This document shows positions 253-10,019 of a DNA stretch of 64,000 bases, piece by piece (position 1 is the first letter of the stretch; each line of letters opens with the position of its first letter). The DNA is from Iphione sp. A-MEVVRFRX5 (Eukaryota). A model generated the notes under the pieces. The model was not told the DNA's origin and made no database searches. It worked only from the letters and a program-made list of their open reading frames with translations. The DNA is taken from positions 66,464,001 through 66,528,000 of the forward strand of contig OZ320319.1 in the NCBI GenBank assembly GCA_976226885.1. The letters are read 5' to 3'. The position numbers and the translations under genes are program-made.

Positions 253-857
253 CTGATATAGACAAAGTCGGATCGTAAAACGGAACGAACAGGTGAGCAT
301 TAATGCAGCAACCTCACTGGCAGGTACATCTCTACAGCTATTATCTACAGGATCTCCAAATACTGTTATTTATCTATTTGAACAGCAAAGATCTGCAATT
401 AGATGTCTTCATCTCTCACATAAATGACAAATTTGCAAAGATACAATTAGAGAATACTTCTCCTAAGAATTACTAATTCACAGAAATATAAAAATATATT
501 GCATTTTCTAACCAGCAGTTCCAAATTTAAATGTCCTAGATCAGTATAAACCTGTCTACAGAAATACCAAATCGTACAGAATTTTAACCGCCATTTTTTA
601 GATAAATATATTCCCGTCGCTGTCTTTTGCGCCACAGAGAATATAGAATCCAAATTTGTAACATGTTTGATGACGTACTATCTAATGAATACTTCCATGA
701 CTCATAATTCATGCAAAATGATAAACTGAACGAAAAGTAATCAGTGTCTTCATGCGTCATGAAATTGCATTCCATGCAAACCTGCTCTTGATGTCCTGGT
801 AAAATTATAATACACCACAAAAATAAATGACAGAGTTCCCGTTGGCTTTGTTCCTCA

Positions 858-867
858 AAGATGGCGG
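858..867 (+). promoter_or_regulatory. YY1-type motif AAGATGGCGG, candidate internal promoter element of the LINE
   Basis: Exact match to the YY1 consensus AANATGGCGG, ~13 nt inside the predicted 5' end, similar to the YY1 site position in human L1. Confidence 0.45.
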
Positions 868-965
868 ACTAAGCGGACGTGCCACTGAGAGGGCTCCGGT
901 GACATGGTGGTTTTTAAGTCTAAATTTGACGCGCTTCTACTAATACGTGGACCCAACAGTAGATT

Positions 966-2633
966 ATGGCTCCAGGAAAACAGACAAAAACGAACAGGAA
1001 GGGAAAACAGCCTGGCGGCCCAAGGAAGGACACAGAAAACTCTGACTCAATGGAACCTTCAGGACCGTTAGACAACAATGGAGGCAACACAGGTATTATG
1101 ACCCGAGGACGCCAAGGCGCTACACCCAAACCACAGCCAAACAATCAACCACCACCGCACACTCCACAGGAACAGCAGTGTGACGGCAATGGCTTTCAAT
1201 GTGGAGGACACGGCATCTCAAGTCAACTACCGGCTACATATGATGTTAGTAAGTACTCTGTCAATGATTTGCTAACCAGACTTTTGAACAATGCCCGTAG
1301 TCAGGACGAAAGGCTTAACACTTTGACGACAAGGCTTACCAACTTCGAATCTCTCGCACAAAGAGTGACCTTACTTGAAAAGAAAGTACTAGGCATTGAG
1401 GGTACCCATAGTGAATTAACCAACAAGTTAGAGGAAATGCAACGCGATCTCTCTACTGCAAATACAAAATCGACGTCTTGTTCTACCAGTGTTGAAGCTC
1501 TAAAGAGTACTGTGCAAAAGGAAGCAGACAAGACTCAAGAAGCACTGAACAAAATGAATAAGCTTCAAAATTCAATAGAAAGCGAGGTTGGCAAAACAAA
1601 ACAAGTATTACAAGAAATTAGGATGAATGAAAGAAACCCCACTGCAGATAATCGTACCTATGACGACGCTGAGATAACTGCTCGCAGAGCCAACCTAATA
1701 ATTGAAGGGCTAACAGAAGTTGAGGGTGAACGACTGATTGACGACACCATGGATATCTGTAGCAAAGTATACCCTGACATCCGTAAGCGCAACATAAAAT
1801 CAGCCATAAGAGGACCAGCAGTGAGAGGCGGTAACACGGAGTCGGGAGTGATAATTGTATCTTTCTCATCCGTGACAATCCGCAACGCGGTTTACAATAA
1901 CAGGACAAAACTACGGTTCAATGACGGCTACGAAAGTATAATGATTAGGGAAGACATTCCAGCCAATTTGAAATCAAAACACAATCTTCTTCACATAGTA
2001 GCTAGTGAAGCGAGAAGAAACGGGGACAGGGCATCAGTGAGAGGACTCAATCTTAGAATCAACAACGTTGACTATTCTCCAGACGACTTGGATTCACTTC
2101 CAAACGGTTTGACACTAGAAAAATGCTTTACAAATGAATCTGACACAGTATTAGCCTTCAAAAGTGAATATCATCCACTTTCAAGTCTTTCCCTAAATGT
2201 TTTTACACATGAGGGCATTGAGTTCAAGAGTGTTGAACACGCATACCAATCGTTGTGTGCGCTAGACCATGACAGCGAGGAATTAGCTGAAGAGATTAGG
2301 AACGCACCGACAGCTTTGGCGGCAAAACGGGCTGGCTATGGGATAGACCACAGTGCCCAATGGGAAGAAAAGCGTGAAATAGTCATGCGCGAAATTTTAA
2401 AATCGAAAGCAGCAGAGTGTGAAAATTTCAGACGGTCTCTGGTCAGCACCGGGACAAAAACTCTGGTTGAAGGCACCTACGATACTTTCTTTGGGGCCGG
2501 GTGTTCCCTGAGGAGCAGCAAAATCAAGGACAAGGAATGGACTGGTACGAACACAATGGGAAAGCTACTGGAAACTCTCCGCCAGGAAATACAGCGGGAC
2601 TTAGACTTCCCTTCACTAAATTCTACTACATAG
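966..2633 (+). CDS. LINE ORF1p: basic disordered N-terminus, coiled coil, RRM/CTD, and C-terminal NADAR (YbiA/DUF1768-like) domain
   Basis: 555 aa, strong Kozak context. Heptad region ~aa 98-220. RRANLIIEGL...IIVSF...IMIREDIP is typical of L1/L2-type ORF1 RRM. The C-terminus (~2148-2600) has FKSVEHAYQ, AAKRAG, WEEKREIVMREILKSK, TGTKTLVEGTYDTFFGAG and WTGTNTMGKLLETLR, the NADAR signature order. Confidence 0.85.
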   Translation: MAPGKQTKTNRKGKQPGGPRKDTENSDSMEPSGPLDNNGGNTGIMTRGRQGATPKPQPNNQPPPHTPQEQQCDGNGFQCGGHGISSQLPATYDVSKYSVNDLLTRLLNNARSQDERLNTLTTRLTNFESLAQRVTLLEKKVLGIEGTHSELTNKLEEMQRDLSTANTKSTSCSTSVEALKSTVQKEADKTQEALNKMNKLQNSIESEVGKTKQVLQEIRMNERNPTADNRTYDDAEITARRANLIIEGLTEVEGERLIDDTMDICSKVYPDIRKRNIKSAIRGPAVRGGNTESGVIIVSFSSVTIRNAVYNNRTKLRFNDGYESIMIREDIPANLKSKHNLLHIVASEARRNGDRASVRGLNLRINNVDYSPDDLDSLPNGLTLEKCFTNESDTVLAFKSEYHPLSSLSLNVFTHEGIEFKSVEHAYQSLCALDHDSEELAEEIRNAPTALAAKRAGYGIDHSAQWEEKREIVMREILKSKAAECENFRRSLVSTGTKTLVEGTYDTFFGAGCSLRSSKIKDKEWTGTNTMGKLLETLRQEIQRDLDFPSLNSTT

Positions 2634-3174
2634 CGAACACCAACGAACGGTATTGTTGTGTGTTTCTCGAATATTATTTGTCTTGTAATTAATTATTTCT
2701 CTCCTCTTCATTTCAGAATACACTTCATTAGTACGTTTTGCTTCAGAAGGTGTCAGTCACCGCTCGGGTTGTTATTATTTTCTGCTATATAGCGGAAATT
2801 CTATCAATTGAAGACATTGACGGATAGTGTGGTAACAAATTTCTTCCCTCAGGAACGTAAGTAGGCACTACTACAATCATTACAGATACCCGGCATTGTT
2901 AGGCTATACTACACTGCTGGAAGATATATCGAACAAATATGTCTATTTAATGTTGATTGTACTAGGGAATGAATGATTATGAACAATCGAGTTCTGTTAC
3001 CCTATAACAATATTTATACTCTGTCTGAGAATCTCAATGCCAGGTTATACTGCATTGTTCACTCTAATTCGTAATCAAAAAATAGGAAAGTTATAAATCA
3101 CTATATTACTTTCACATCCAATTGAATGACTTGCATATACTGACATTCTGACTGATTTCCATAGTGAATCTACC

Positions 3175-3786
3175 ATGGGCGCTCGCAGACGTATTCTACT
3201 AATGACCGATTCTCGTGGAAGGGATATCAAACATCACTGGACCCCAATAAATGGAACGGTTGTCAACATAATGGTACTGCCGGGGCTCCAATACAAAACT
3301 GTCTTCAGATATCTAAAAGGAGACTGGATAGGGAACTATGATGTGGTAATCTTACACATGGGAATATGCGATATCACACTGAAGAGAGGTAAGAAATTGT
3401 ACCTAAGACATGAGGACCCAGAGACATATGGCCTCAGACATTCTGTCATCTTATCTCATCTTGAGTCGATAATGAAACGCTGTGACTGGGTGAAACTAAT
3501 TATCGCTCCTATTGTAGGTCTAGACCTCAAAAGGTATAGTATGTCAACCTATTCTCAACATGCCCAGTCGGTCATTAACTCCAGTGTTTGGATAGTCAAC
3601 GAAAACATCAAACTGTTCAACAAACGTAATGGGAACTTCACACCGAACACGTACAGTCCAATCCACTACATGCAAAACGGCAAAAAGAAAAATAAATACG
3701 GTAAATTATCTGACGGTTGTCACCAAAACAGCAGAGTCTCTCTTAATTGGGTGAGACAGTATAGGATAGCTATATCAAAACTTTAA
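3175..3786 (+). CDS. SGNH/GDSL-type hydrolase (esterase/OSK-like fold), stand-alone ORF of the LINE
   Basis: 203 aa, perfect Kozak ACCATGG. Block I ILLMTDSRGR (Ser13), block II LPG, block III HMGICDI, block V LSDGCH (Asp-x-x-His). Confidence 0.75.
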   Translation: MGARRRILLMTDSRGRDIKHHWTPINGTVVNIMVLPGLQYKTVFRYLKGDWIGNYDVVILHMGICDITLKRGKKLYLRHEDPETYGLRHSVILSHLESIMKRCDWVKLIIAPIVGLDLKRYSMSTYSQHAQSVINSSVWIVNENIKLFNKRNGNFTPNTYSPIHYMQNGKKKNKYGKLSDGCHQNSRVSLNWVRQYRIAISKL

Positions 3787-4036
3787 TCGGTCCATGGCCA
3801 GACACATGCAACCGGAACATGTAATCACAGAATCTTTTGGCTGTGCGTGACACAATGTCACAGTTATACACAATTTGCCTGTACGTGACCTTACGACACA
3901 CTAATGTCACTAATTACTCAATGATTATATTCAAATTTAAAATGGAAACTAGAAGAGTTCATGCACTCTAAGAGTTGCCTACAATTAGCCTTCTCTTTCT
4001 CTATAGAAGTCAGCACTATCAATCTGTGAATGATTT

Positions 4037-4123
4037 ATCTTTGTATTATACTGTCTTTGATGTAATTACGTTATTACTCAATCTTTGTATTATACTGTCT
4101 TTGATGTAATTACCTTATTACTT
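4037..4123 (+). repeat. 44-bp tandem duplication in the SGNH-to-pol spacer
   Basis: atctttgtattatactgtctttgatgtaattac(g/c)ttattact starts at 4037 and at 4081. Confidence 0.9.
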
Positions 4124-4262
4124 GACATTTCCATTATTTTTTCTCGTTATCTATGTTTGAATACTTACTGCCGACCTTGTTACCGGAGCCCACTCAAAAT
4201 TTCAAAGCATATCATTTCTGTACTTTATTTTATTTAATTTGCATCTGTCTAGTTCGGAATAA

Positions 4263-7049
4263 ATGATGAAAGGGAGAGTTTTCTCTTACTGGAACATACA
4301 TAGCATTTTACCGAAATTAGAGGAAGTAAATAGTGTGTTAGAACAAAATGGGATCTTAGTTATGGGAGTAACCGAAACATGGTTATGTGAATCAATCCCA
4401 TCATCTGCAATAGAGCATCTGGGATATCACTCACATAGGCAGGACAGAGCATCAGTTAAAAAGGCTAGAGGTGGCGGCATAGTAACATATGTTAGTAATG
4501 CAGTACAGTCAGAAGTCTTATTAGAAGATAGTATCTGCACCGATGATATTGAATGTCTGTGGGTCAATCTCCGCAGTAACTTTAGAAAACCAGTGATTAT
4601 GGGAACAGTGTATAGGCCACCTGAAGGCGATATCACTAACTTCCAATCATATTTGAAAGAAAAATTAGCCAAATTCAGAAAAGGGACAAAAAATGAAATA
4701 ATACTGGGCGGTGATTTCAATATTAATTTTTTATCTGAATCAAACGCACAACGACATCTGTCATGCACCTGTGCATCCTTTGGACTTACTCAGTTGATTA
4801 CTGAATCCACGCTTATACACCCAACAGCCAAGTCCTGTTTAGATCTGATTTTCACCAGTTTAGGCAACATATCAAACAGTGGCACCTTATTGAATGCATC
4901 TAGCGACCATTTACCGGTCTTCATATGTGATAAGAAGCCCAGGGAAAAAACTCGTAGAAAAACAATACAGGTTAGGGATTGGTCTAACTATGACTCATCT
5001 ACTTTGAAAGAATGCCTAGAGGACACGGTCATCCGCCTAGGGACAGACAGTGTACTGGATGCGGAGACAAAATGGGTTGAACTTCAATCAGCAATAACAG
5101 ATGCAGCAAAACATGTATGCCCACTCAAAGGAAAAGTCATCAAAACAGGCAACGGCTGGGTAGATGGGGAACTAAAAGAATATATTCGAAATAGGGACTA
5201 TTTCCATCGAGATTTCAAAAGAACAGGGAGCGTAGACTCTTTCAGGATCTACAAGTTCTATAAAAGCAAAGTAAAAAATCATACAAAGAAATTGAAAAGG
5301 AAATTCATCTCGGACAAACTTAGCAGGTGTAAGAATAGCAAAGATTACTGGTCAGTCATAAACAACGTAGTGTTACGAAAGGACAAGACGCCCCAGAATA
5401 TTGAACTGAAAGAAGGTGATGACTGGGTGGGCAGCGAGCAGGTACCGGAGGTCTTGAACAACTACTTTGTAGACCAACCTACATCATTGGCGGACAACCT
5501 GAACGTCCATGTACAACTGAAACAGCCTGACATGGACGGATGGGAGATGAAACTGGTAAGAACTGATGAGGTGTTTAAGGTAGTTAGCTCTTTAAACTGT
5601 AAAAAACCTAGTGGGATAGACGGGATCCCAACAAAACTGCTGAAAGACTCTTTAATAATTGCAATAGAACCACTTCGAGACATCTTCAATGAATTAATCG
5701 TCAGTTCAAAATTCTTAAACCAATGGAAGGAAGCTAAAGTCACACCGCTTCACAAAAAAGGCAGTAGGACTGATAAGAAAAATTTCAGACCCATAGCAAT
5801 TTTACCAGTAGTAGGAAAGATATTCGAGAGATTAATGTACAATCAAATTAATAGCTACCTTGACTCGATTGATTTCTTTGCCAAAGAACAGCACGGTTTC
5901 CGAAGCCTGCACAGCACTGAGACAGCAACAGCGTGCCTACTGAAGGATGTGTACGAAGCAATCGACGACAACCGACACGTAGGAGCTGTCTTCGTCGATA
6001 TGACTAAGGCATTCGACGTTGCAAATCATGGTAAAATTATCGAAAAATTGACAACGGTAGGGGTTGGTCAGAGAACTATACAGCTCCTAAGATCCTATCT
6101 ATCAGACAGACTGCAGCTGGTGAGGTGCAATTCGAGCATCTCAGCACAACGAGACATCACGGTTGGAGTGCCCCAAGGGAGTATTTTAGGTCCCTTTCTA
6201 TTTAGCATACTAATTAATGATCTCCCAAAAGCCCAAATAGTAACGAGCAGTATCATGTACGCAGATGACGTGACCATCTATGCCATAGCATCAAACATAA
6301 TGGCACTAAGACTCAAATTACAACGTGGTGTCAAAGACATACTGAGCTGGACGCGCCAAAATGGTTTAGTAATTAGTGAGGAAAAAACTTTCTACATGAC
6401 TTTTGGCAAAAGTAAAAATCTAGAATTAGATTTGTCTCTAGACAATCAGATAATATTGAAAAAAACAAGTTGCAAGTTCCTAGGCTACCACATAGATAAT
6501 AACTTATCATGGAGATCTCTCTTGCAACATATGCAAAGAACAACCAAATCACGTAGCTACTACATTGGTAAAATGTCGAGACTACTCAGTTTCAAAGACA
6601 AATCTATACTCTTTAAAAGCTTCCTGCTATCTCTCTTCGACTATGGTTTACCATTCATAGTAAGTCAGAAAAAGAAATATGTTGACAACTTGCAAGTAAG
6701 TTGCAACCAAATCATGCGAAACATAATCATGGGTAGAAGATTCAATTATCAATCAAATTTGTCATTAAGGAAAAGACTGGGAGTAGATTCCTTGGAAATA
6801 AGAGGTCGCAGGTCACTGCTGTGCCTGATCCATAGGTTATATCTACTAGGGATATTAAAGCTAAAAGGGAAAAGAAAGAATGCTACAAGACTAAGCATAT
6901 CCCTCCAGCTACAACAAAAAAGACCAAGAACCTCCTTTTACAAGCTCTCCTTCATTTATACAGGTATCGAGTTGTGGAATGCCCTCCCGACGAGAGTCAA
7001 ATCAAAGAGAGACTTGAAGGCTTTCAAGCGGTCACTACATCACTGCTGA
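4263..7049 (+). CDS. LINE pol: apurinic-like endonuclease plus reverse transcriptase
   Basis: 928 aa, uninterrupted. APE motifs WNIHS, GVTETWL, RGGGIVTYV, VYRPP, GGDFNIN, LDLIF, SDHLPV. RT motifs NFRPIAILPVVGKIFE, QHGFR, FVDMTKAFD, GVPQGSILGP, YADD, KFLGYHID. CR1/L2-type C-terminal SFIYTGIELWNALP. Confidence 0.97.
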   Translation: MMKGRVFSYWNIHSILPKLEEVNSVLEQNGILVMGVTETWLCESIPSSAIEHLGYHSHRQDRASVKKARGGGIVTYVSNAVQSEVLLEDSICTDDIECLWVNLRSNFRKPVIMGTVYRPPEGDITNFQSYLKEKLAKFRKGTKNEIILGGDFNINFLSESNAQRHLSCTCASFGLTQLITESTLIHPTAKSCLDLIFTSLGNISNSGTLLNASSDHLPVFICDKKPREKTRRKTIQVRDWSNYDSSTLKECLEDTVIRLGTDSVLDAETKWVELQSAITDAAKHVCPLKGKVIKTGNGWVDGELKEYIRNRDYFHRDFKRTGSVDSFRIYKFYKSKVKNHTKKLKRKFISDKLSRCKNSKDYWSVINNVVLRKDKTPQNIELKEGDDWVGSEQVPEVLNNYFVDQPTSLADNLNVHVQLKQPDMDGWEMKLVRTDEVFKVVSSLNCKKPSGIDGIPTKLLKDSLIIAIEPLRDIFNELIVSSKFLNQWKEAKVTPLHKKGSRTDKKNFRPIAILPVVGKIFERLMYNQINSYLDSIDFFAKEQHGFRSLHSTETATACLLKDVYEAIDDNRHVGAVFVDMTKAFDVANHGKIIEKLTTVGVGQRTIQLLRSYLSDRLQLVRCNSSISAQRDITVGVPQGSILGPFLFSILINDLPKAQIVTSSIMYADDVTIYAIASNIMALRLKLQRGVKDILSWTRQNGLVISEEKTFYMTFGKSKNLELDLSLDNQIILKKTSCKFLGYHIDNNLSWRSLLQHMQRTTKSRSYYIGKMSRLLSFKDKSILFKSFLLSLFDYGLPFIVSQKKKYVDNLQVSCNQIMRNIIMGRRFNYQSNLSLRKRLGVDSLEIRGRRSLLCLIHRLYLLGILKLKGKRKNATRLSISLQLQQKRPRTSFYKLSFIYTGIELWNALPTRVKSKRDLKAFKRSLHHC

Positions 7050-7235
7050 GCAAACCCTGTGAACTACGACATTTTTGCAGCAATAAGAAGAAGATAGCGT
7101 CAATATAATTCATATATCATATTGTGTCAAAGAAAGAAATAGAACTTTATTTACTACTGCTGAGTAAACCTTGTGTACTACAATGTTTTGCAAAAAGAAG
7201 AAGAAGACAGCGACAATGTAATTCATATATTGACT
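7042..7235 (+). repeat. Diverged ~114-bp tandem duplication at the start of the LINE 3' UTR
   Basis: actgctgag(c/t)aaacc...agaagaaga(t/c)agcg(t/a)caat(a/g)taattcatatat begins at 7042 and at 7156. Confidence 0.8.
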
Positions 7236-7378
7236 CTTACTGCATGTATATAGAAGAGAACTAGCAGGATAAGTAGATGACAAATGGCCAACATACAGAG
7301 AGTTAACACTGTAATTTGCAAATGCACCCTTCGTTATGTTCACAGGGATATCTTGCGATGTATTTCGCTTAAGACGTG

Positions 7379-7406
7379 AATAAACGTATCTTGTATCTTG
7401 TATCTT
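7379..7406 (+). terminator. LINE 3' end: poly(A) signal AATAAA plus (GTATCTT)3 tail
   Basis: AATAAA at 7379-7384 followed by three perfect 7-mers at 7386-7406; short tandem-repeat tails are typical of CR1/L2-group LINEs. Confidence 0.8.
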
Positions 7407-7490
7407 GTTGGTGACTCATACTTATTAGTTCGCCGCGTGCTCCGCATAACCTTCCCTGAGGCCCGTACTGTACTAGAACAGCCGTCTTAC

Positions 7491-7808
7491 CCTCCAGCAC
7501 GACGAGCTCGGCCGAGCAGGTCGAGGTACCCACTGGGTTCTTGGCCACTACCGTGTAGCGGCCCGTGTCCTCGGGGAACACCTCCTTGATGACGAGCGAG
7601 CAGCGGTTGTCATCCTCGTCGTACGTCTGCACGAAGTCGGGCGCCGGCTCGATGCGCGTGCTGTCCCGGAACCAGGCGATTAAAGGCCGGGGCCGGCCGA
7701 ACACCGTGCATTCGAGCCGCGCCATGCAGCCGTCCAGGATGCACTGACTACTCAGCGGGACGGTGAACTCCGGGCCAGACGGTTCGCCGATGAAATCCTC
7801 GATGTCCG
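7491..7808 (-). CDS. Titin-like exon, one complete Ig-I domain
   Basis: PEFTVPL...ARLECTVFGRPRPLIAWF...DTGRYTVVAKNPVG; AG at 7810-7809, GTAAG at 7490; 318 bp, phase 1-1. Confidence 0.92.
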
Positions 7809-8249
7809 CTAAGTGTGCGGGAGAGTTTGGAGTAAATTCTGTGAATCCCGGATTGTACTCTCCCTTGGACATATATGTGCAACTATAGGTGTATGCTGTT
7901 TAAGCTTTGCACCCGTGTCTATGTAAGCATATGGGGCTGTTCTTGTGTGTGAATTAATACCTATGTGTATGAGTGTTTGTTTACCTTTCATTGTGCAATG
8001 GGGATGGTATCTTCTGGACTAGCCATGCTTAGGGATACCTCAGTTAATACGTATACTGTGTTGCATGCACATACATGTACCTATTCCGCGATCAAATAAC
8101 ATTACCAAAGGAATAAAACAAGAAAAGCAAACATGTAACTAACTTCTCGGAAAAATTCTCCATCAGTAATGGTCGTATATATGAACAGACAAAATGAATA
8201 ACGATATTTCTAGACTATGAAATTCATAAATGGCGTCGGCAGATCTTAC

Positions 8250-10019
8250 TTGCTTCTGCAGACATCTCGTCGATTGCTCCAGCTAGCTGCCTTTCCACCA
8301 ATCGAATGTACTGCTCCTTGTTCTTCAGGTAGGAGCCGGGAACCCATCCTTCCTTACCATTGAAGGTCTTTTTCACCAACCACCAATCGTCCTGAGAGTC
8401 ATCTAGCACCTCCACTTTCTCGCCCTCGTGCAAGGACATGACCTCGTCCGACTCAGGGTCGTAGGCACTGATGGCGATGTAGAAGGCGCCATGCTCGCCC
8501 GCCAGTTCCGAGCCACTCAGGTGTGAGTGGCTGGAGAGGGCGTCCAGCTCCGAGAGCGAACTGACCGATGGCGCTGACACTGCCTCGCCGCCGCCGCCGC
8601 CGCCGCCGCCATCGGCCGCAGCTTCATCGTGAGGGCCCGCAACGGCGTGAGTAACAATACTCTCCACGCGGTCGCTCTTCTTGCGCAGCTGCTTGACGTC
8701 AGTGTCAGTCTTGATTTCACTGAGCTGCTCAAGGGAAAAGGCCCCACGTTGGTTGAGCTCCATGCGGATCGTCTTCACCTCGGTAACTGTGCTGTTGACA
8801 GTCACTTCCTCCAGTAGTTGGGTTTCCTCTGTCCTGTAGGCCTTGTCCGTCTCCAGCTGCAAGCCCACCAGGTTCTCCACGCCAGGGCCTGGTTCAAACA
8901 CGGTGTCTGGCCGCAGAGTTACCTCAAAGGTGGGCTCAGTAGGGAATGACCTCTGTTTGGATAGCTCATTGCTGGCCACAGCGGCGTCCGCTTTTGTTCC
9001 TTGCGTACCGTCGTGTGCGCGAGTGGACACCTGCATGGTGGCCTCCTCCTCCCGCACAACCATCTGCTTTACTACCTCTGCACGTAGTTGCTCGTTCGCC
9101 TTCTGTGGGTGAGGCAACACCACTACACTAGTTGTTTCATACACAAACGGATCAGTGCGAGTGAACTTAACCTCTTGCGTCCGTTCTTGTGTGAACGTTG
9201 GCTTTTGACTTCGTTCCATCTTCTCCTCTACCTCCTCTCTCCCTACATCCACTTTTGCCGCTGACTCTCTGCTGATCTCCGCAGCCTCAACTCTGTCTTC
9301 TGCTGCCTCAACTCTGTCTTCTGCTGCCTCAACTCTGTCTTCTGCTGCCTCAACTCTGTCTTCTGCTGCATCACCTCTGACTTCTATTGCATCGACTCTG
9401 ATGTCTTCCGCCTCACCTGTGACTTCTTCTGCTACATCTCTGACTTCTCCTGCCTCACCTCTGACTTCTTCCTCACCTCTCACTTCTACTGCATCGCCTC
9501 TGAGTTCCCATGCCTCGACTCTGATGTCTTGTGTCTCACCTCTGATTTCTACTGCCTCACGTCCGAGTGCTCCTGCCTCGACGTTGACGTCTTCAGTCTC
9601 GCCTCCTAATTCTTCTGGCTCAAATCTGATTTCTTTCGCCTCACCTCTCACTTGTTTTACCATTATTTCTGTCACCTCTGTAGTCGAGAGATTCTGAATT
9701 TCATCCATTTGAAAATCTTCTTCATCCATCGGAAGTTCTGACGCTTCTCCTTCTGTAATGTCTTCTTCTGAAAGTGTAATGTCTGATTCCGACTCCTCGC
9801 TCTTCCAAACTAAGGGCGCTGTTCTGACCTCATTCACTGAACCTCCTTCACTACGTACTTCAGTCTCAAAACCTAATTGCTCGTCATCCTTCGGTAATAA
9901 AACTGTAGGCTTATCTCTGCTCCTTTCAACTTTCTTAATTTCTTCCTCAGAAATCTCGGACAAGCTTTCGTCAGAGTAGTCACCATCAGGGGCGGAGTGC
10001 TGACTCGTCTCTAAGATAC
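8250..10019 (-). CDS. Titin-like exon: acidic low-complexity region plus SH3 domain (~8326-8484)
   Basis: FYIAISAYDPESDEVMSLHEGEKVEVLDDSQDDWWLVKKTFNGKEGWVPGSYL is a canonical SH3 pattern; AG at 10021-10020, GTAAG at 8249; 1770 bp, phase 1-1. Confidence 0.88.
9284..9367. repeat. Coding 21-bp tandem repeat x4 (EDRVEAA) within a longer degenerate 7-aa repeat tract (~9280-9650)
   Basis: gcctcaactctgtcttctgct starts at 9284, 9305, 9326 and 9347. Confidence 0.95.

What the first reader, a model, noticed from the sequence alone, without database searches (positions are those of the whole stretch)
966..2633. LINE ORF1 protein fused to a NADAR (ADP-ribose/guanine N-glycosidase-like) domain: a possible retrotransposon anti-defence enzyme
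Seen: the 555-aa ORF1 has a coiled coil and an L1/L2-type RRM (RRANLIIEGL...IIVSF...IREDIP). It then runs in frame into a ~150-aa C-terminus (~2148-2600) with NADAR motifs in the expected order: SVEHAYQ (Glu424), AAKRAG, WEEKREIVMREILKSK, TGTKTLVE, YDTFFGAG (Asp506; the usual Trp is Phe) and GTNTMGKLL. Established: NADAR/YbiA proteins hydrolyse N-glycosidic bonds, including removal of ADP-ribose from DNA guanine in the bacterial DarT1-NADAR system, and phage NADARs counter DarT1. The CR1/L2-group ORF1 accessory domains I know of are PHD, esterase, RRM and CCHC; I know of no described ORF1-NADAR fusion but cannot search. Inference: ORF1p coats the element's RNP, so it could carry a de-ADP-ribosylase to the integration site. 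There it might reverse host ADP-ribosylation of DNA, RNA or protein by PARPs, or by guanine-specific pierisin/CARP-1-type transferases known from some invertebrates. That would parallel phage anti-DarT defence.
Basis: partly seen in the sequence, partly recalled or inferred. Interest (0 to 1): 0.93.

Follow-up and report, generated by a model that had tools for sequence, protein, structure and literature searches.

The report
LINE coat protein carrying NADAR enzyme
A jumping gene (a LINE retrotransposon) in this invertebrate genome ends its RNA-packaging protein in a true NADAR enzyme domain, the kind that strips ADP-ribose off DNA and RNA bases; related elements keep the fusion under selection, it has had only one passing mention in print, and its function is untested.

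Summary
ORF 966-2633 is open (555 aa). Its C-terminus is a true YbiA-type NADAR domain (Pfam 79.9 bits against a cut-off of 35.1; best fold hits 8BAU and 2B3W). It sits in frame behind an L1-type RRM-CTD module.

The fusion is not a chance nesting:
- The top 24 NADAR relatives in this genome lie upstream of the same small SGNH-esterase ORF, 23 within about 1.4 kb and one 7.6 kb away. Twenty are also followed by an APE-RT that is among the closest relatives of the window's ORF2.
- The layout recurs in unrelated public assemblies.
- More than 1,300 public 50%-identity cluster representatives match at E<=1e-10.
- Selection keeps the domain: dN/dS is 0.07-0.35, and the catalytic Glu/Lys/Glu triad is kept in 27 of 27 genomic relatives and 131 of 150 public ones.

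The fusion is not undescribed: a 2025 paper notes NADAR in oyster Tx1 LINE ORF1s in one sentence. This particular copy is unusual: it is single-copy, and the phosphate-binding Lys/Arg is Cys431. A 99%-conserved RRM Arg is also lost (Gly294), so this copy may be impaired.

The counter-defence function is plausible but untested. This scan has already reported the same fusion many times on other DNA of this genome.

The parts
698..706 (.). Candidate 5' target-site duplication TGACTCATA. If real, the element starts at 707.
   Evidence: The same 9-mer recurs at 7412-7420, 3 nt after the 3' tail. About 0.01 is expected by chance for a match at that place. Suggestive only.
707..965 (+). 5' UTR; the exact start is uncertain (another reader placed it at 846).
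   Evidence: Lies upstream of the ORF1 ATG. It has no DNA similarity to other copies.
966..2633 (+). ORF1, 555 aa: low-complexity N-terminus, coiled-coil-like region, RRM, CTD and NADAR.
1263..1640 (+). Coiled-coil-like region of ORF1p (aa ~100-225).
   Evidence: Weak matches to many coiled-coil families (BST2, SMC, Rad50, HAUS) over aa 95-245. Inferred, not modelled.
1683..2141 (+). L1-type RRM (aa ~240-330) plus C-terminal domain (aa ~331-392). The RRM has Gly294 where 99% of relatives have Arg/Lys.
   Evidence: Foldseek hits 2YKO/2YKP/2YKQ at E 1e-5 and 2LDY (RRM-CTD). The family profile hits L1 ORF1p at 8.6e-8. Departure at 294, codon GGA.
2142..2606 (+). YbiA-type NADAR domain (aa ~393-547; Pfam match aa 399-542).
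   Evidence: PF08719 79.9 bits. TIGR02464 80.3 bits. 8BAU and 2B3W are the best fold and profile hits. E424, W466, E502 and D506 are kept.
2256..2258 (+). Codon TGT = Cys431, at the position of the catalytic, phosphate-binding Lys (K50 of 8BAU, K95 of E. coli C7 NADAR).
   Evidence: Lys/Arg stands here in 27 of 27 genomic relatives and 133 of 150 public representatives. The role of the Lys is described in PMC11543638.
3175..3786 (+). Middle ORF, 203 aa: free-standing SGNH/GDSL-fold hydrolase.
   Evidence: Model pLDDT 91. 72 PDB matches at E<=1e-3, all SGNH esterases or acyl-transferases. Ser13, Asp180 and His183 are invariant in 16 sequences; the block III Asn is Cys. 3,299 first-look candidates in the genome.
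4037..4137 (.). 44-bp tandem duplication in the spacer between the middle ORF and ORF2.
   Evidence: Tandem Repeats Finder: 2.0 copies, 97% match.
4263..7049 (+). ORF2, 928 aa: apurinic-type endonuclease (aa 10-219) and reverse transcriptase (aa 497-744).
   Evidence: PF03372/PF14529 and PF00078 at E 9e-34. 52-56% identical full-length relatives lie downstream of the NADAR ORF1 relatives.
7050..7408 (+). 3' UTR. The last 73 nt (7336-7408) are conserved and it ends in (GTATCTT)x3.3 at 7386-7408.
   Evidence: Microsatellite tail. The last 73 nt are 86-95% identical to the 3' ends of elements whose RT DNA is only ~70% identical. The predicted RNA fold is no better than shuffles (z -0.63).
7412..7420 (.). 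Candidate 3' target-site duplication TGACTCATA.

Best explanation
Shown: window ~707-7411 is one full-length, single-copy member of a large and old lineage of three-ORF, CR1/L2-like LINEs. Its ORF1 protein is an L1-type RNA-packaging protein (coiled coil, RRM, CTD) that runs in frame into a YbiA-type NADAR N-glycosidase domain. A separate SGNH esterase ORF and an endonuclease/reverse-transcriptase ORF follow. The fusion is inherited along the lineage and kept by purifying selection with its active site intact. Inferred: in the family, NADAR rides in the ORF1p-coated RNP. There it most likely hydrolyses the N-glycosidic bond of ADP-ribose (or a similar adduct) on guanine or cytosine of the element's RNA, its new cDNA or the nicked target DNA. 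This is the activity shown in vitro for every NADAR family tested, and it would remove a modification that blocks reverse transcription or integration. Whether that modification is put on by a host defence enzyme is unknown. Specific to this copy: the phosphate-binding Lys/Arg is Cys431 and a near-invariant RRM Arg is Gly294. This element may therefore be weakened or inactive even though all three ORFs are open.
For: - Domain and fold.
- Family-wide linkage in this genome: 4,215 first-look NADAR candidates, and all 150 scored have E<=5e-19, mostly in 450-650-aa open frames. Most of the 29 nearest relatives fetched align with ORF1 from the coiled coil or RRM through NADAR. Of the 24 best non-self NADAR loci, 23 have the SGNH ORF 0.5-1.4 kb downstream on the same strand and one has it 7.6 kb away. 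Twenty are followed by one of only 49 scored ORF2 relatives.
- Divergence tracks across the parts: NADAR 49-57% goes with ORF2 52-55%, and NADAR 34-42% with ORF2 41-46%.
- Other assemblies: NADAR ORF then APE-RT in L041; NADAR, GDSL, then ORF2 in L043. Their ORF2s are 30% and 26% identical to the window's along their length.
- Public breadth: 1,319 cluster representatives at E<=1e-10. Nearly all of the best 150 are matched from within the RRM through NADAR.
- Selection: pN<pS in 210 of 210 pairs; NADAR dN/dS is 0.07-0.35 where dS is measurable.
- Active site: the positions of E43, W89 and E125 of 8BAU are kept in 148, 145 and 148 of 150 public sequences and in 27 of 27 genomic ones.
- Biochemistry from papers: all four NADAR families remove G-ADPr from DNA and RNA, and YbiA-type ones also remove C-ADPr (PMC12945103; PMC11543638).
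Against: - No enzyme assay or expression data exist; no RNA run was listed.
- This copy lacks the Lys whose Ala mutant loses activity in E. coli C7 NADAR. 17 of 150 public relatives also lack a basic residue there.
- No nucleic-acid ADP-ribosyltransferase was found in the genome. DarT, Enterotoxin_a and ADPrib_exo_Tox were blank with silent controls. There is only one PF01129 ART-family frame, of unknown substrate.
- YbiA itself acts on riboflavin intermediates, so the physiological substrate of orphan NADARs is open.
- The CR1/L2 placement rests on the tail, the ORF2 size and the C-terminal motif, not on a reference RT tree.
Confidence: 0.5

Rival explanations
1. NADAR processes the element's own RNA ends or cap and does not reverse a host attack. 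It could, for example, clear ADP-ribose- or NAD-derived groups from the transcript, as proposed for NADARs of RNA viruses.
For: Structural neighbours in the ESM Atlas include NADAR fused to the mRNA capping enzyme of Nucleocytoviricota, to the RdRp of Pisuviricota, and to Macro domains in bacteria. PMC12477816 proposes RNA-intermediate processing for the retrotransposon NADARs. The domain is welded to an RNA-binding RRM-CTD in a confident single model (pTM 0.88).
Against: No NADAR has been shown to act on RNA termini. In Table 1 of PMC12945103, terminal phosphate-ADPr is removed by macrodomains, PARG and ARH3, not by NADAR.
Confidence: 0.2
2. The domain is kept as a non-catalytic nucleic-acid-binding or structural module, at least in this copy and in other members that lack the Lys.
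For: Cys431 in the window. 17 of 150 public representatives have H, I, M, A, C, N, T or F at that site while keeping the fold. Other notes of this scan report copies with lost catalytic residues (these are leads only).
Against: The two Glu and the Trp are kept in about 97-99% of family members that are only 25-57% identical overall. That is the pattern of an active site, not of a scaffold. Some Lys-less sequences may be decaying copies.
Confidence: 0.15
3. The domain is a small-molecule N-glycosidase like YbiA, acting on riboflavin intermediates or NAD-derived metabolites, with an indirect benefit to the element.
For: The best NCBIfam model is TIGR02464, the riboflavin-intermediate N-glycosidase, above its cut-off. 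It carries the YbiA-type Glu at the E125 position.
Against: There is no evident reason for thousands of LINE copies to keep a metabolic housekeeping enzyme fused to their RNA chaperone. YbiA-type enzymes also hydrolyse G- and C-ADPr on nucleic acids.
Confidence: 0.05
4. The fusion is an accident of this locus: a nested insertion or a captured host exon.
For: The window's element has no close DNA copy in the genome.
Against: The same colinear ORF1(RRM-CTD-NADAR), SGNH and ORF2 order occurs in at least 20 diverged loci here and in other assemblies. Selection acts on the domain.
Confidence: 0.01

Closest known systems
Tx1 LINEs of Crassostrea gigas in Repbase, whose ORF1 proteins contain YbiA-family NADAR domains (one sentence in PMC12477816, Genome Biol 2025)
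   Same: A LINE ORF1 protein carrying a YbiA-type NADAR domain in a lophotrochozoan-type invertebrate. Its function is unknown.
   Different: Those are classed as Tx1 (L1 group). The window's element has a 928-aa ORF2, a microsatellite tail, a conserved 3' end and a separate SGNH ORF, which are CR1/L2-like features. One public locus (L042) does show a NADAR ORF in front of a very different RT (21% identity over 227 aa), so the domain occurs in at least two LINE clades. I could not read the Repbase sequences.
Ectocarpus Gypsy LTR retrotransposons with an N-terminal NADAR domain in Pol (PMC12477816)
   Same: A retroelement-borne YbiA-family NADAR that is conserved within a lineage.
   Different: It is an LTR element, the domain is fused to Pol and not to the RNA-packaging protein, it is found in a brown alga, and the authors suggest bacterial origin.
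Phytophthora nicotianae NADAR (PDB 8BAU) and E. coli YbiA (PDB 2B3W)
   Same: The best fold and profile matches. The E43, W89, R93, E125 and D130 equivalents are kept. The Glu at the E125 position defines the YbiA subfamily.
   Different: Those are free-standing single-domain proteins. In the window the K50 equivalent is Cys, R79 is Tyr and W133 is Phe (Phe in 24 of the 27 nearest relatives in this genome).
Human LINE-1 ORF1p (PDB 2YKO, 2LDY), the type II ORF1p of Khazina and Weichenrieder
   Same: Coiled coil, RRM and CTD in the same order. Type II is known from the L1, CR1, L2 and R1 clades (PMC4120745).
   Different: No known type I-V ORF1p has a C-terminal enzyme of this kind. The 448-element survey of Jockey-superfamily ORF1s does not mention NADAR, DUF1768 or YbiA.
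Esterase-bearing (type IV) ORF1p of CR1/L2 elements such as ZfL2-1 (PMC3905857)
   Same: An SGNH-fold esterase encoded upstream of ORF2 in a CR1/L2-like LINE.
   Different: Here the esterase is a separate 203-aa ORF between ORF1 and ORF2, found in an invertebrate. In some relatives it is fused behind NADAR (P0002).
DarG1 antitoxins and phage anti-DarT1 NADARs (PMC11543638, PMC11257639)
   Same: A mobile element carrying a NADAR.
   Different: Those have Asp (DarG1) or His (phage) at the E125 position, and a known cognate transferase, DarT1. Here it is Glu, and no transferase partner is known.

Membership tests
NADAR superfamily (Pfam PF08719) | Profile match above the curated threshold | tested here: met
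   79.9 bits against a cut-off of 35.1, aa 399-542. The family profile hits 8BAU at 3.3e-27.
NADAR superfamily (Pfam PF08719) | YbiA-like fold (helical core with flanking small sheets) | tested here: met
   Model pLDDT 95.6. Foldseek finds 8BAU at TM 0.71 and 2B3W at TM 0.74 as the top hits.
NADAR superfamily (Pfam PF08719) | Catalytic Glu (E43 of 8BAU, E88 of E. coli C7 NADAR) | tested here: met
   E424. Glu in 148 of 150 public and 27 of 27 genomic relatives.
NADAR superfamily (Pfam PF08719) | Phosphate-binding Lys (K50 of 8BAU, K95 of C7 NADAR; Arg tolerated in vitro) | tested here: not met
   Cys431 in the window, codon TGT. Lys/Arg in 27 of 27 genomic and 133 of 150 public relatives. The family meets this feature; this copy does not.
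NADAR superfamily (Pfam PF08719) | Hydrolysis of base-linked ADP-ribose or another N-glycosidic bond | not testable with these tools
   Needs an enzyme assay.
YbiA subfamily of NADAR | Glu at the E125 position (Asp in DarG1/BC4488, His in phage NADARs) | tested here: met
   E502. Glu in 148 of 150 public relatives. TIGR02464 scores 80.3 bits against a cut-off of 73.7.
DarTG1-type antitoxin or phage anti-DarT1 NADAR | Cognate DarT1 transferase, and Asp or His at the E125 position | tested here: not met
   The residue is Glu. PF14487 DarT gave no match in the genome, though the control genomes were silent too.
L1-type (type II) ORF1p | RRM followed by CTD, of the L1 ORF1p fold | tested here: met
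   2YKO/2YKP/2YKQ at E 1e-5 to 2e-4 and 2LDY at 6e-4. Profile E 8.6e-8. No hit to Pfam PF02994 itself.
L1-type (type II) ORF1p | N-terminal trimeric coiled coil | tested here: inconclusive
   Only weak matches to coiled-coil families over aa 95-245. Oligomer state was not modelled.
CR1/L2-like LINE (Jockey superfamily) | APE plus RT ORF2 of about 900-1000 aa | tested here: met
   928 aa with PF03372/PF14529 and PF00078.
CR1/L2-like LINE (Jockey superfamily) | 3' end conserved among elements and ending in a short tandem repeat, not poly(A) | tested here: met
   (GTATCTT)x3.3 at 7386-7408. The last 73 nt are 86-95% identical in elements with ~70% RT identity.
CR1/L2-like LINE (Jockey superfamily) | RT groups with reference CR1/L2 sequences in a phylogeny | not tested
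   No reference LINE RT set was available, and homologues carried no names. The placement is my inference, which also uses the C-terminal WNxLP-type motif known to me from CR1-like ORF2s.
SGNH/GDSL hydrolase (middle ORF) | SGNH fold with a Ser-Asp-His triad | tested here: met
   72 PDB hits at E<=1e-3, all SGNH. S13, D180 and H183 are invariant. The block III Asn is replaced by Cys. Pfam itself was silent for the window's copy and weak for L043.

The most novel reading that the evidence does not exclude
Animal LINEs, and perhaps other mobile elements of these genomes, carry an active base-specific de-ADP-ribosylase. They do so because the host, or microbes living with it, ADP-ribosylate guanine or cytosine in retroelement RNA, cDNA or nicked target DNA as a restriction mechanism. 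CARP-1-type transferases, reported mainly from bivalves but also from Cnidaria, Porifera and other Bilateria (PMC12945103), are one candidate. That would make this a eukaryotic counterpart of the DarT1 / phage-NADAR arms race.
Probability: 0.2. Interest if true: 0.9.

Novelty: new variant of a known kind. Interest (0 to 1): 0.6.

Why it matters
Published classifications of LINE ORF1 proteins (types I-V) list RRM, CCHC, PHD, esterase and coiled-coil modules but no ADP-ribose-related enzyme. The only mention I found is one sentence in a 2025 paper. Here the fusion proves abundant: thousands of candidates in one genome and more than a thousand public protein clusters. It is also old and under purifying selection on its active site. 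That makes a concrete question testable: do animal cells ADP-ribosylate nucleic-acid bases of retroelements, and do retroelements erase the mark? A positive answer would reveal an innate anti-transposon mechanism in animals that parallels bacterial DarTG. It would also give orphan eukaryotic NADARs a physiological substrate. For this copy the interest is lower. It is a single, possibly impaired member, useful mainly as a natural Lys-to-Cys variant.

Tried and rejected
- Longer loci. Linkage therefore rests on coordinates from three genome searches, compared by eye, and not on a script.
- Word-index protein searches. The whole ORF1 found only two relatives. The NADAR region alone found none, because of the length window. 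The exhaustive representative search was needed.
- Names and taxa. The ESM Atlas gives Annelida as the commonest recorded phylum for the nearest clusters.
- Expression. No RNA run was listed for the element.
- Host transferases. DarT (PF14487), Enterotoxin_a (PF01375) and ADPrib_exo_Tox (PF03496) gave nothing, but nothing rang in the control genomes either, so these blanks are uninformative. I had no usable CARP-1 or pierisin query.
- 3' end structure. The last 109 nt fold no better than shuffles (z -0.63).
- Script error. A first residue mapping after hmmalign was off by six positions and gave nonsense counts. It was corrected.
- Chance nesting was rejected (see rivals).
Full report
**1. Observation**

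One search lists an ATG-to-stop ORF at 966-2633 on the plus strand, 555 aa. It is followed on the same strand by a 203-aa ORF (3175-3786) and a 928-aa ORF (4263-7049).

- Pfam matches NADAR (PF08719) at aa 399-542 with E 3.2e-22 and 79.9 bits, against a gathering cut-off of 35.1.
- NCBIfam TIGR02464 (riboflavin-intermediate N-glycosidase, the YbiA type) scores 80.3 bits against a cut-off of 73.7.
- By sequence alone the domain already finds the two solved NADARs, 8BAU and 2B3W.
- ORF2 carries the endonuclease and reverse-transcriptase families.

**2. Anatomy of ORF1p**

I aligned aa 225-555 with 20 relatives from this genome and 51 public ones (A1) and folded it. The model has mean pLDDT 95.6 and pTM 0.88.

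Foldseek against the PDB returns, in order:
- P. nicotianae NADAR with ADP-ribose (8BAU, E 3e-9, TM 0.71);
- E. coli YbiA (2B3W, TM 0.74);
- nine chains of the human LINE-1 ORF1p trimer (2YKO, 2YKP, 2YKQ; E 1e-5 to 2e-4);
- the RRM-CTD structure 2LDY.

The family profile hits 8BAU at 3.3e-27 and L1 ORF1p at 8.6e-8. ORF1p is thus an L1-type (type II) protein with RRM and CTD, with NADAR welded on behind. The region aa ~95-245 gives only weak matches to coiled-coil families, so I take the coiled coil as inferred.

**3. The whole element**

- The middle ORF has the SGNH blocks, with Ser13, Asp180 and His183 invariant in 16 sequences. The block III Asn is replaced by Cys in this genome's clade.
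- Its model (pLDDT 91) finds 72 PDB structures at E<=1e-3, all SGNH esterases or acyl-transferases.
- The 3' UTR ends in (GTATCTT)x3.3 at 7386-7408.
- The last 73 nt are 86-95% identical to the 3' ends of elements whose RT DNA is only about 70% identical.
- A 9-bp repeat, TGACTCATA, at 698-706 and 7412-7420 is a candidate target-site duplication.
- The tail, the conserved 3' end, the short ORF2 and its C-terminal motif point to a CR1/L2-like element. That placement is my inference. No reference RT tree could be made, and homologues carried no names.
- The element lies antisense in an intron of a host gene with I-set Ig and SH3 exons.

**4. Is the fusion a property of the lineage?**

Yes, on four counts.

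- A six-frame search of the window's own 1.18-Gb genome with the NADAR domain gave 4,215 first-look candidates. All 150 that were scored had E<=5e-19, and most sit in open frames of 450-650 aa.
- Most of the 29 nearest relatives fetched align with the window's ORF1 from the coiled coil or RRM through NADAR.
- I compared the coordinates of the NADAR hits, the SGNH hits (3,299 candidates) and the ORF2 hits (only 49 scored). Of the 24 best non-self NADAR loci, 23 have the SGNH ORF 0.5-1.4 kb downstream on the same strand, and one has it 7.6 kb away. Twenty are followed by one of the 49 closest ORF2 relatives.
- Divergence tracks across the parts. Loci with 49-57% NADAR identity have 52-55% ORF2 identity, and loci with 34-42% have 41-46%. 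That fits joint vertical descent.

**5. Outside this genome**

The exhaustive search of 1.84 billion cluster representatives with aa 234-555 found 5,952 proteins at E<=1e-3 and 1,319 at E<=1e-10. Nearly all of the best 150 are matched from within the RRM through NADAR.

Three contexts were fetched:
- L041 has two identical 664-aa NADAR ORFs followed by a 977-aa APE-RT. That ORF2 is 30% identical to the window's over its whole length.
- L043 has a NADAR ORF, then a 229-aa GDSL ORF, then ORF2, which is 26% identical.
- L042 has a NADAR ORF 127 nt upstream of an APE-RT that is only 21% identical over 227 aa. That is another LINE clade, and its NADAR lacks the flanking RRM similarity.

P0002 and an ESM Atlas cluster join CCHC, NADAR and GDSL in a single ORF. 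The recorded taxa of the nearest Atlas clusters are mostly Annelida.

**6. Selection and active site**

Codon alignments of 21 genomic sequences give pN<pS in all 210 pairs for the RRM, the CTD and NADAR alike. Where dS is measurable, NADAR dN/dS is 0.07-0.35.

I mapped the residues that Schuller et al. describe for 8BAU and E. coli C7 NADAR (PMC11543638) through the alignments:

| 8BAU residue | Window | Public relatives (n=150) | Genomic relatives (n=27) |
|---|---|---|---|
| E43 | E424 | Glu in 148 | Glu in 27 |
| W89 | W466 | Trp in 145 | Trp in 27 |
| E125 (marks the YbiA subfamily) | E502 | Glu in 148 | Glu in 27 |
| K50 | C431 | Lys/Arg in 133 | Lys/Arg in 27 |

The full Glu-Lys/Arg-Glu set is kept in 131 of 150 public and 27 of 27 genomic relatives.

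**7. What is special about this copy**

- It has no close DNA relative in the genome. The next best match is 71% identical over the RT only, and the next best NADAR is 57% identical at the protein level.
- At the K50 position it has Cys431 (codon TGT). Only 2 of the 150 public sequences also have Cys there. In E. coli C7 NADAR this Lys is essential for efficient guanine-ADPr hydrolysis, and Arg can replace it in vitro.
- Among 52 alignment columns where at least 90% of the other sequences share a residue class, the window departs at four. Relatives depart at 0-4, with a median of 1.
- Two of the four departures are basic residues conserved at 96-99%: Arg/Lys294 to Gly in the RRM (codon GGA), and 431. 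The other two (283 and 284) look like a one-residue deletion in the RRM loop.
- Both substitutions are one step from Arg codons (AGA to GGA; CGT to TGT at a CpG). With no close copy to compare, this cannot be checked.
- All three ORFs being open argues that the insertion is young, yet its ORF1p may be impaired.

**8. Function**

The architecture, the inheritance and the selection are shown. The mechanism is inferred.

- Published work shows that members of all four NADAR families remove ADP-ribose from guanine in DNA and RNA, and that YbiA-type and NADAR-type enzymes also remove it from cytosine (PMC12945103; PMC11543638).
- ORF1p coats the LINE RNA and enters the integration complex. A base de-ADP-ribosylase fused to it would therefore act on the element's RNA, cDNA or target DNA. 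I rate this reading at about 0.45-0.5.
- Whether a host transferase writes the mark is open. DarT, Enterotoxin_a and ADPrib_exo_Tox searches were blank with silent controls. One PF01129 ART-family frame exists.
- CARP-1 homologues are reported mainly from bivalves, and also from Cnidaria, Porifera and other Bilateria. I could not search for them.
- Rival readings are RNA-end or cap processing, a non-catalytic role, and a metabolic role. RNA-end or cap processing is supported by viral fusions of NADAR with capping enzymes and RdRps.

**9. Comparison with the literature**

- The 448-element survey of Jockey-superfamily ORF1s lists types I-V and never mentions NADAR, DUF1768 or YbiA. It found esterase ORF1s only in vertebrate subgroups (PMC4120745).
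- The only mention of NADAR in retrotransposons in the searched library is PMC12477816. It describes an Ectocarpus Gypsy lineage with NADAR in Pol. In one sentence it adds that ORF1 proteins of several Tx1 LINEs of Crassostrea gigas in Repbase appear to contain YbiA-family NADAR domains.
- The kind is therefore known, barely. The three-ORF CR1/L2-like layout, its abundance, the selection on it and the active-site census are new detail.

**10. Earlier notes of this scan**

The scan holds 230 notes with the word NADAR for this genome. Several follow-ups reached the same reading, including the 2025 paper and copies with lost catalytic residues. I found the paper independently before reading those notes, and I tested the claims here. 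A note of a PolB-NADAR fusion in the same genome was not checked.

**11. Verdict**

This is a new variant of a barely described kind, of good interest as a family, and this copy is a probably weakened single member.

Noticed in passing
window 3175-3786: The middle ORF is a free-standing SGNH-fold hydrolase. Ser13, Asp180 and His183 are invariant, but the oxyanion-hole Asn of block III is replaced by Cys (GICD) throughout this genome's clade. The relative in L043 keeps Asn (GIND).
   Followed up: yes
window 1845-1847 (codon 294) and 1809-1817: In the RRM this copy has Gly where 99% of 71 relatives have Arg/Lys. It also lacks one residue in the conserved R-[ILV]-G turn.
   Followed up: partly
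window 4037-4137: A 44-bp tandem duplication (2 copies, 97% match) lies in the spacer between the esterase ORF and ORF2. That spacer is about 480 nt here and about 110-150 nt in most relatives.
   Followed up: no
window 698-706 and 7412-7420: A 9-bp direct repeat TGACTCATA flanks the element. It is a candidate target-site duplication and would put the 5' end at 707, not 846.
   Followed up: partly
window 7369-9963, minus strand: Host gene exons encode an I-set immunoglobulin domain (E 3e-21) and, further on, an acidic repeat region with an SH3 domain (E 3e-12). The LINE lies antisense in the intron, about 80 nt from what reads as a GT donor near 7486.
   Followed up: partly
L042:8001-11867: A 505-aa NADAR ORF (P0001; NADAR 39% identical to the window's) sits 127 nt upstream of an APE-RT that is only 21% identical to the window's ORF2 over 227 aa. 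NADAR-bearing ORF1s therefore occur in at least two deeply separated LINE clades.
   Followed up: partly
L041:8001-16453: Two identical 664-aa NADAR ORF1s lie 2.8 kb apart, each preceded by the same 135-aa ORF, before a single 977-aa ORF2. This is a tandem duplication of the 5' part of an element.
   Followed up: no
P0002 (714 aa) and an ESM Atlas cluster (Annelida): Some relatives join a CCHC zinc knuckle, NADAR and a GDSL esterase in one ORF. The esterase is therefore fused behind NADAR in some lineages and split off in others.
   Followed up: partly
G000:C22:19330202-19330666 (minus strand): This is the only match in the genome to the ART family (PF01129, 67 bits, in a 308-aa open frame). 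It is a mono-ADP-ribosyltransferase of unknown substrate.
   Followed up: no
same genome, another piece (scan note s1-353830): An earlier first-reader note reports a PolB-NADAR fusion in this genome. If it holds, more than one class of mobile element here carries NADAR.
   Followed up: no
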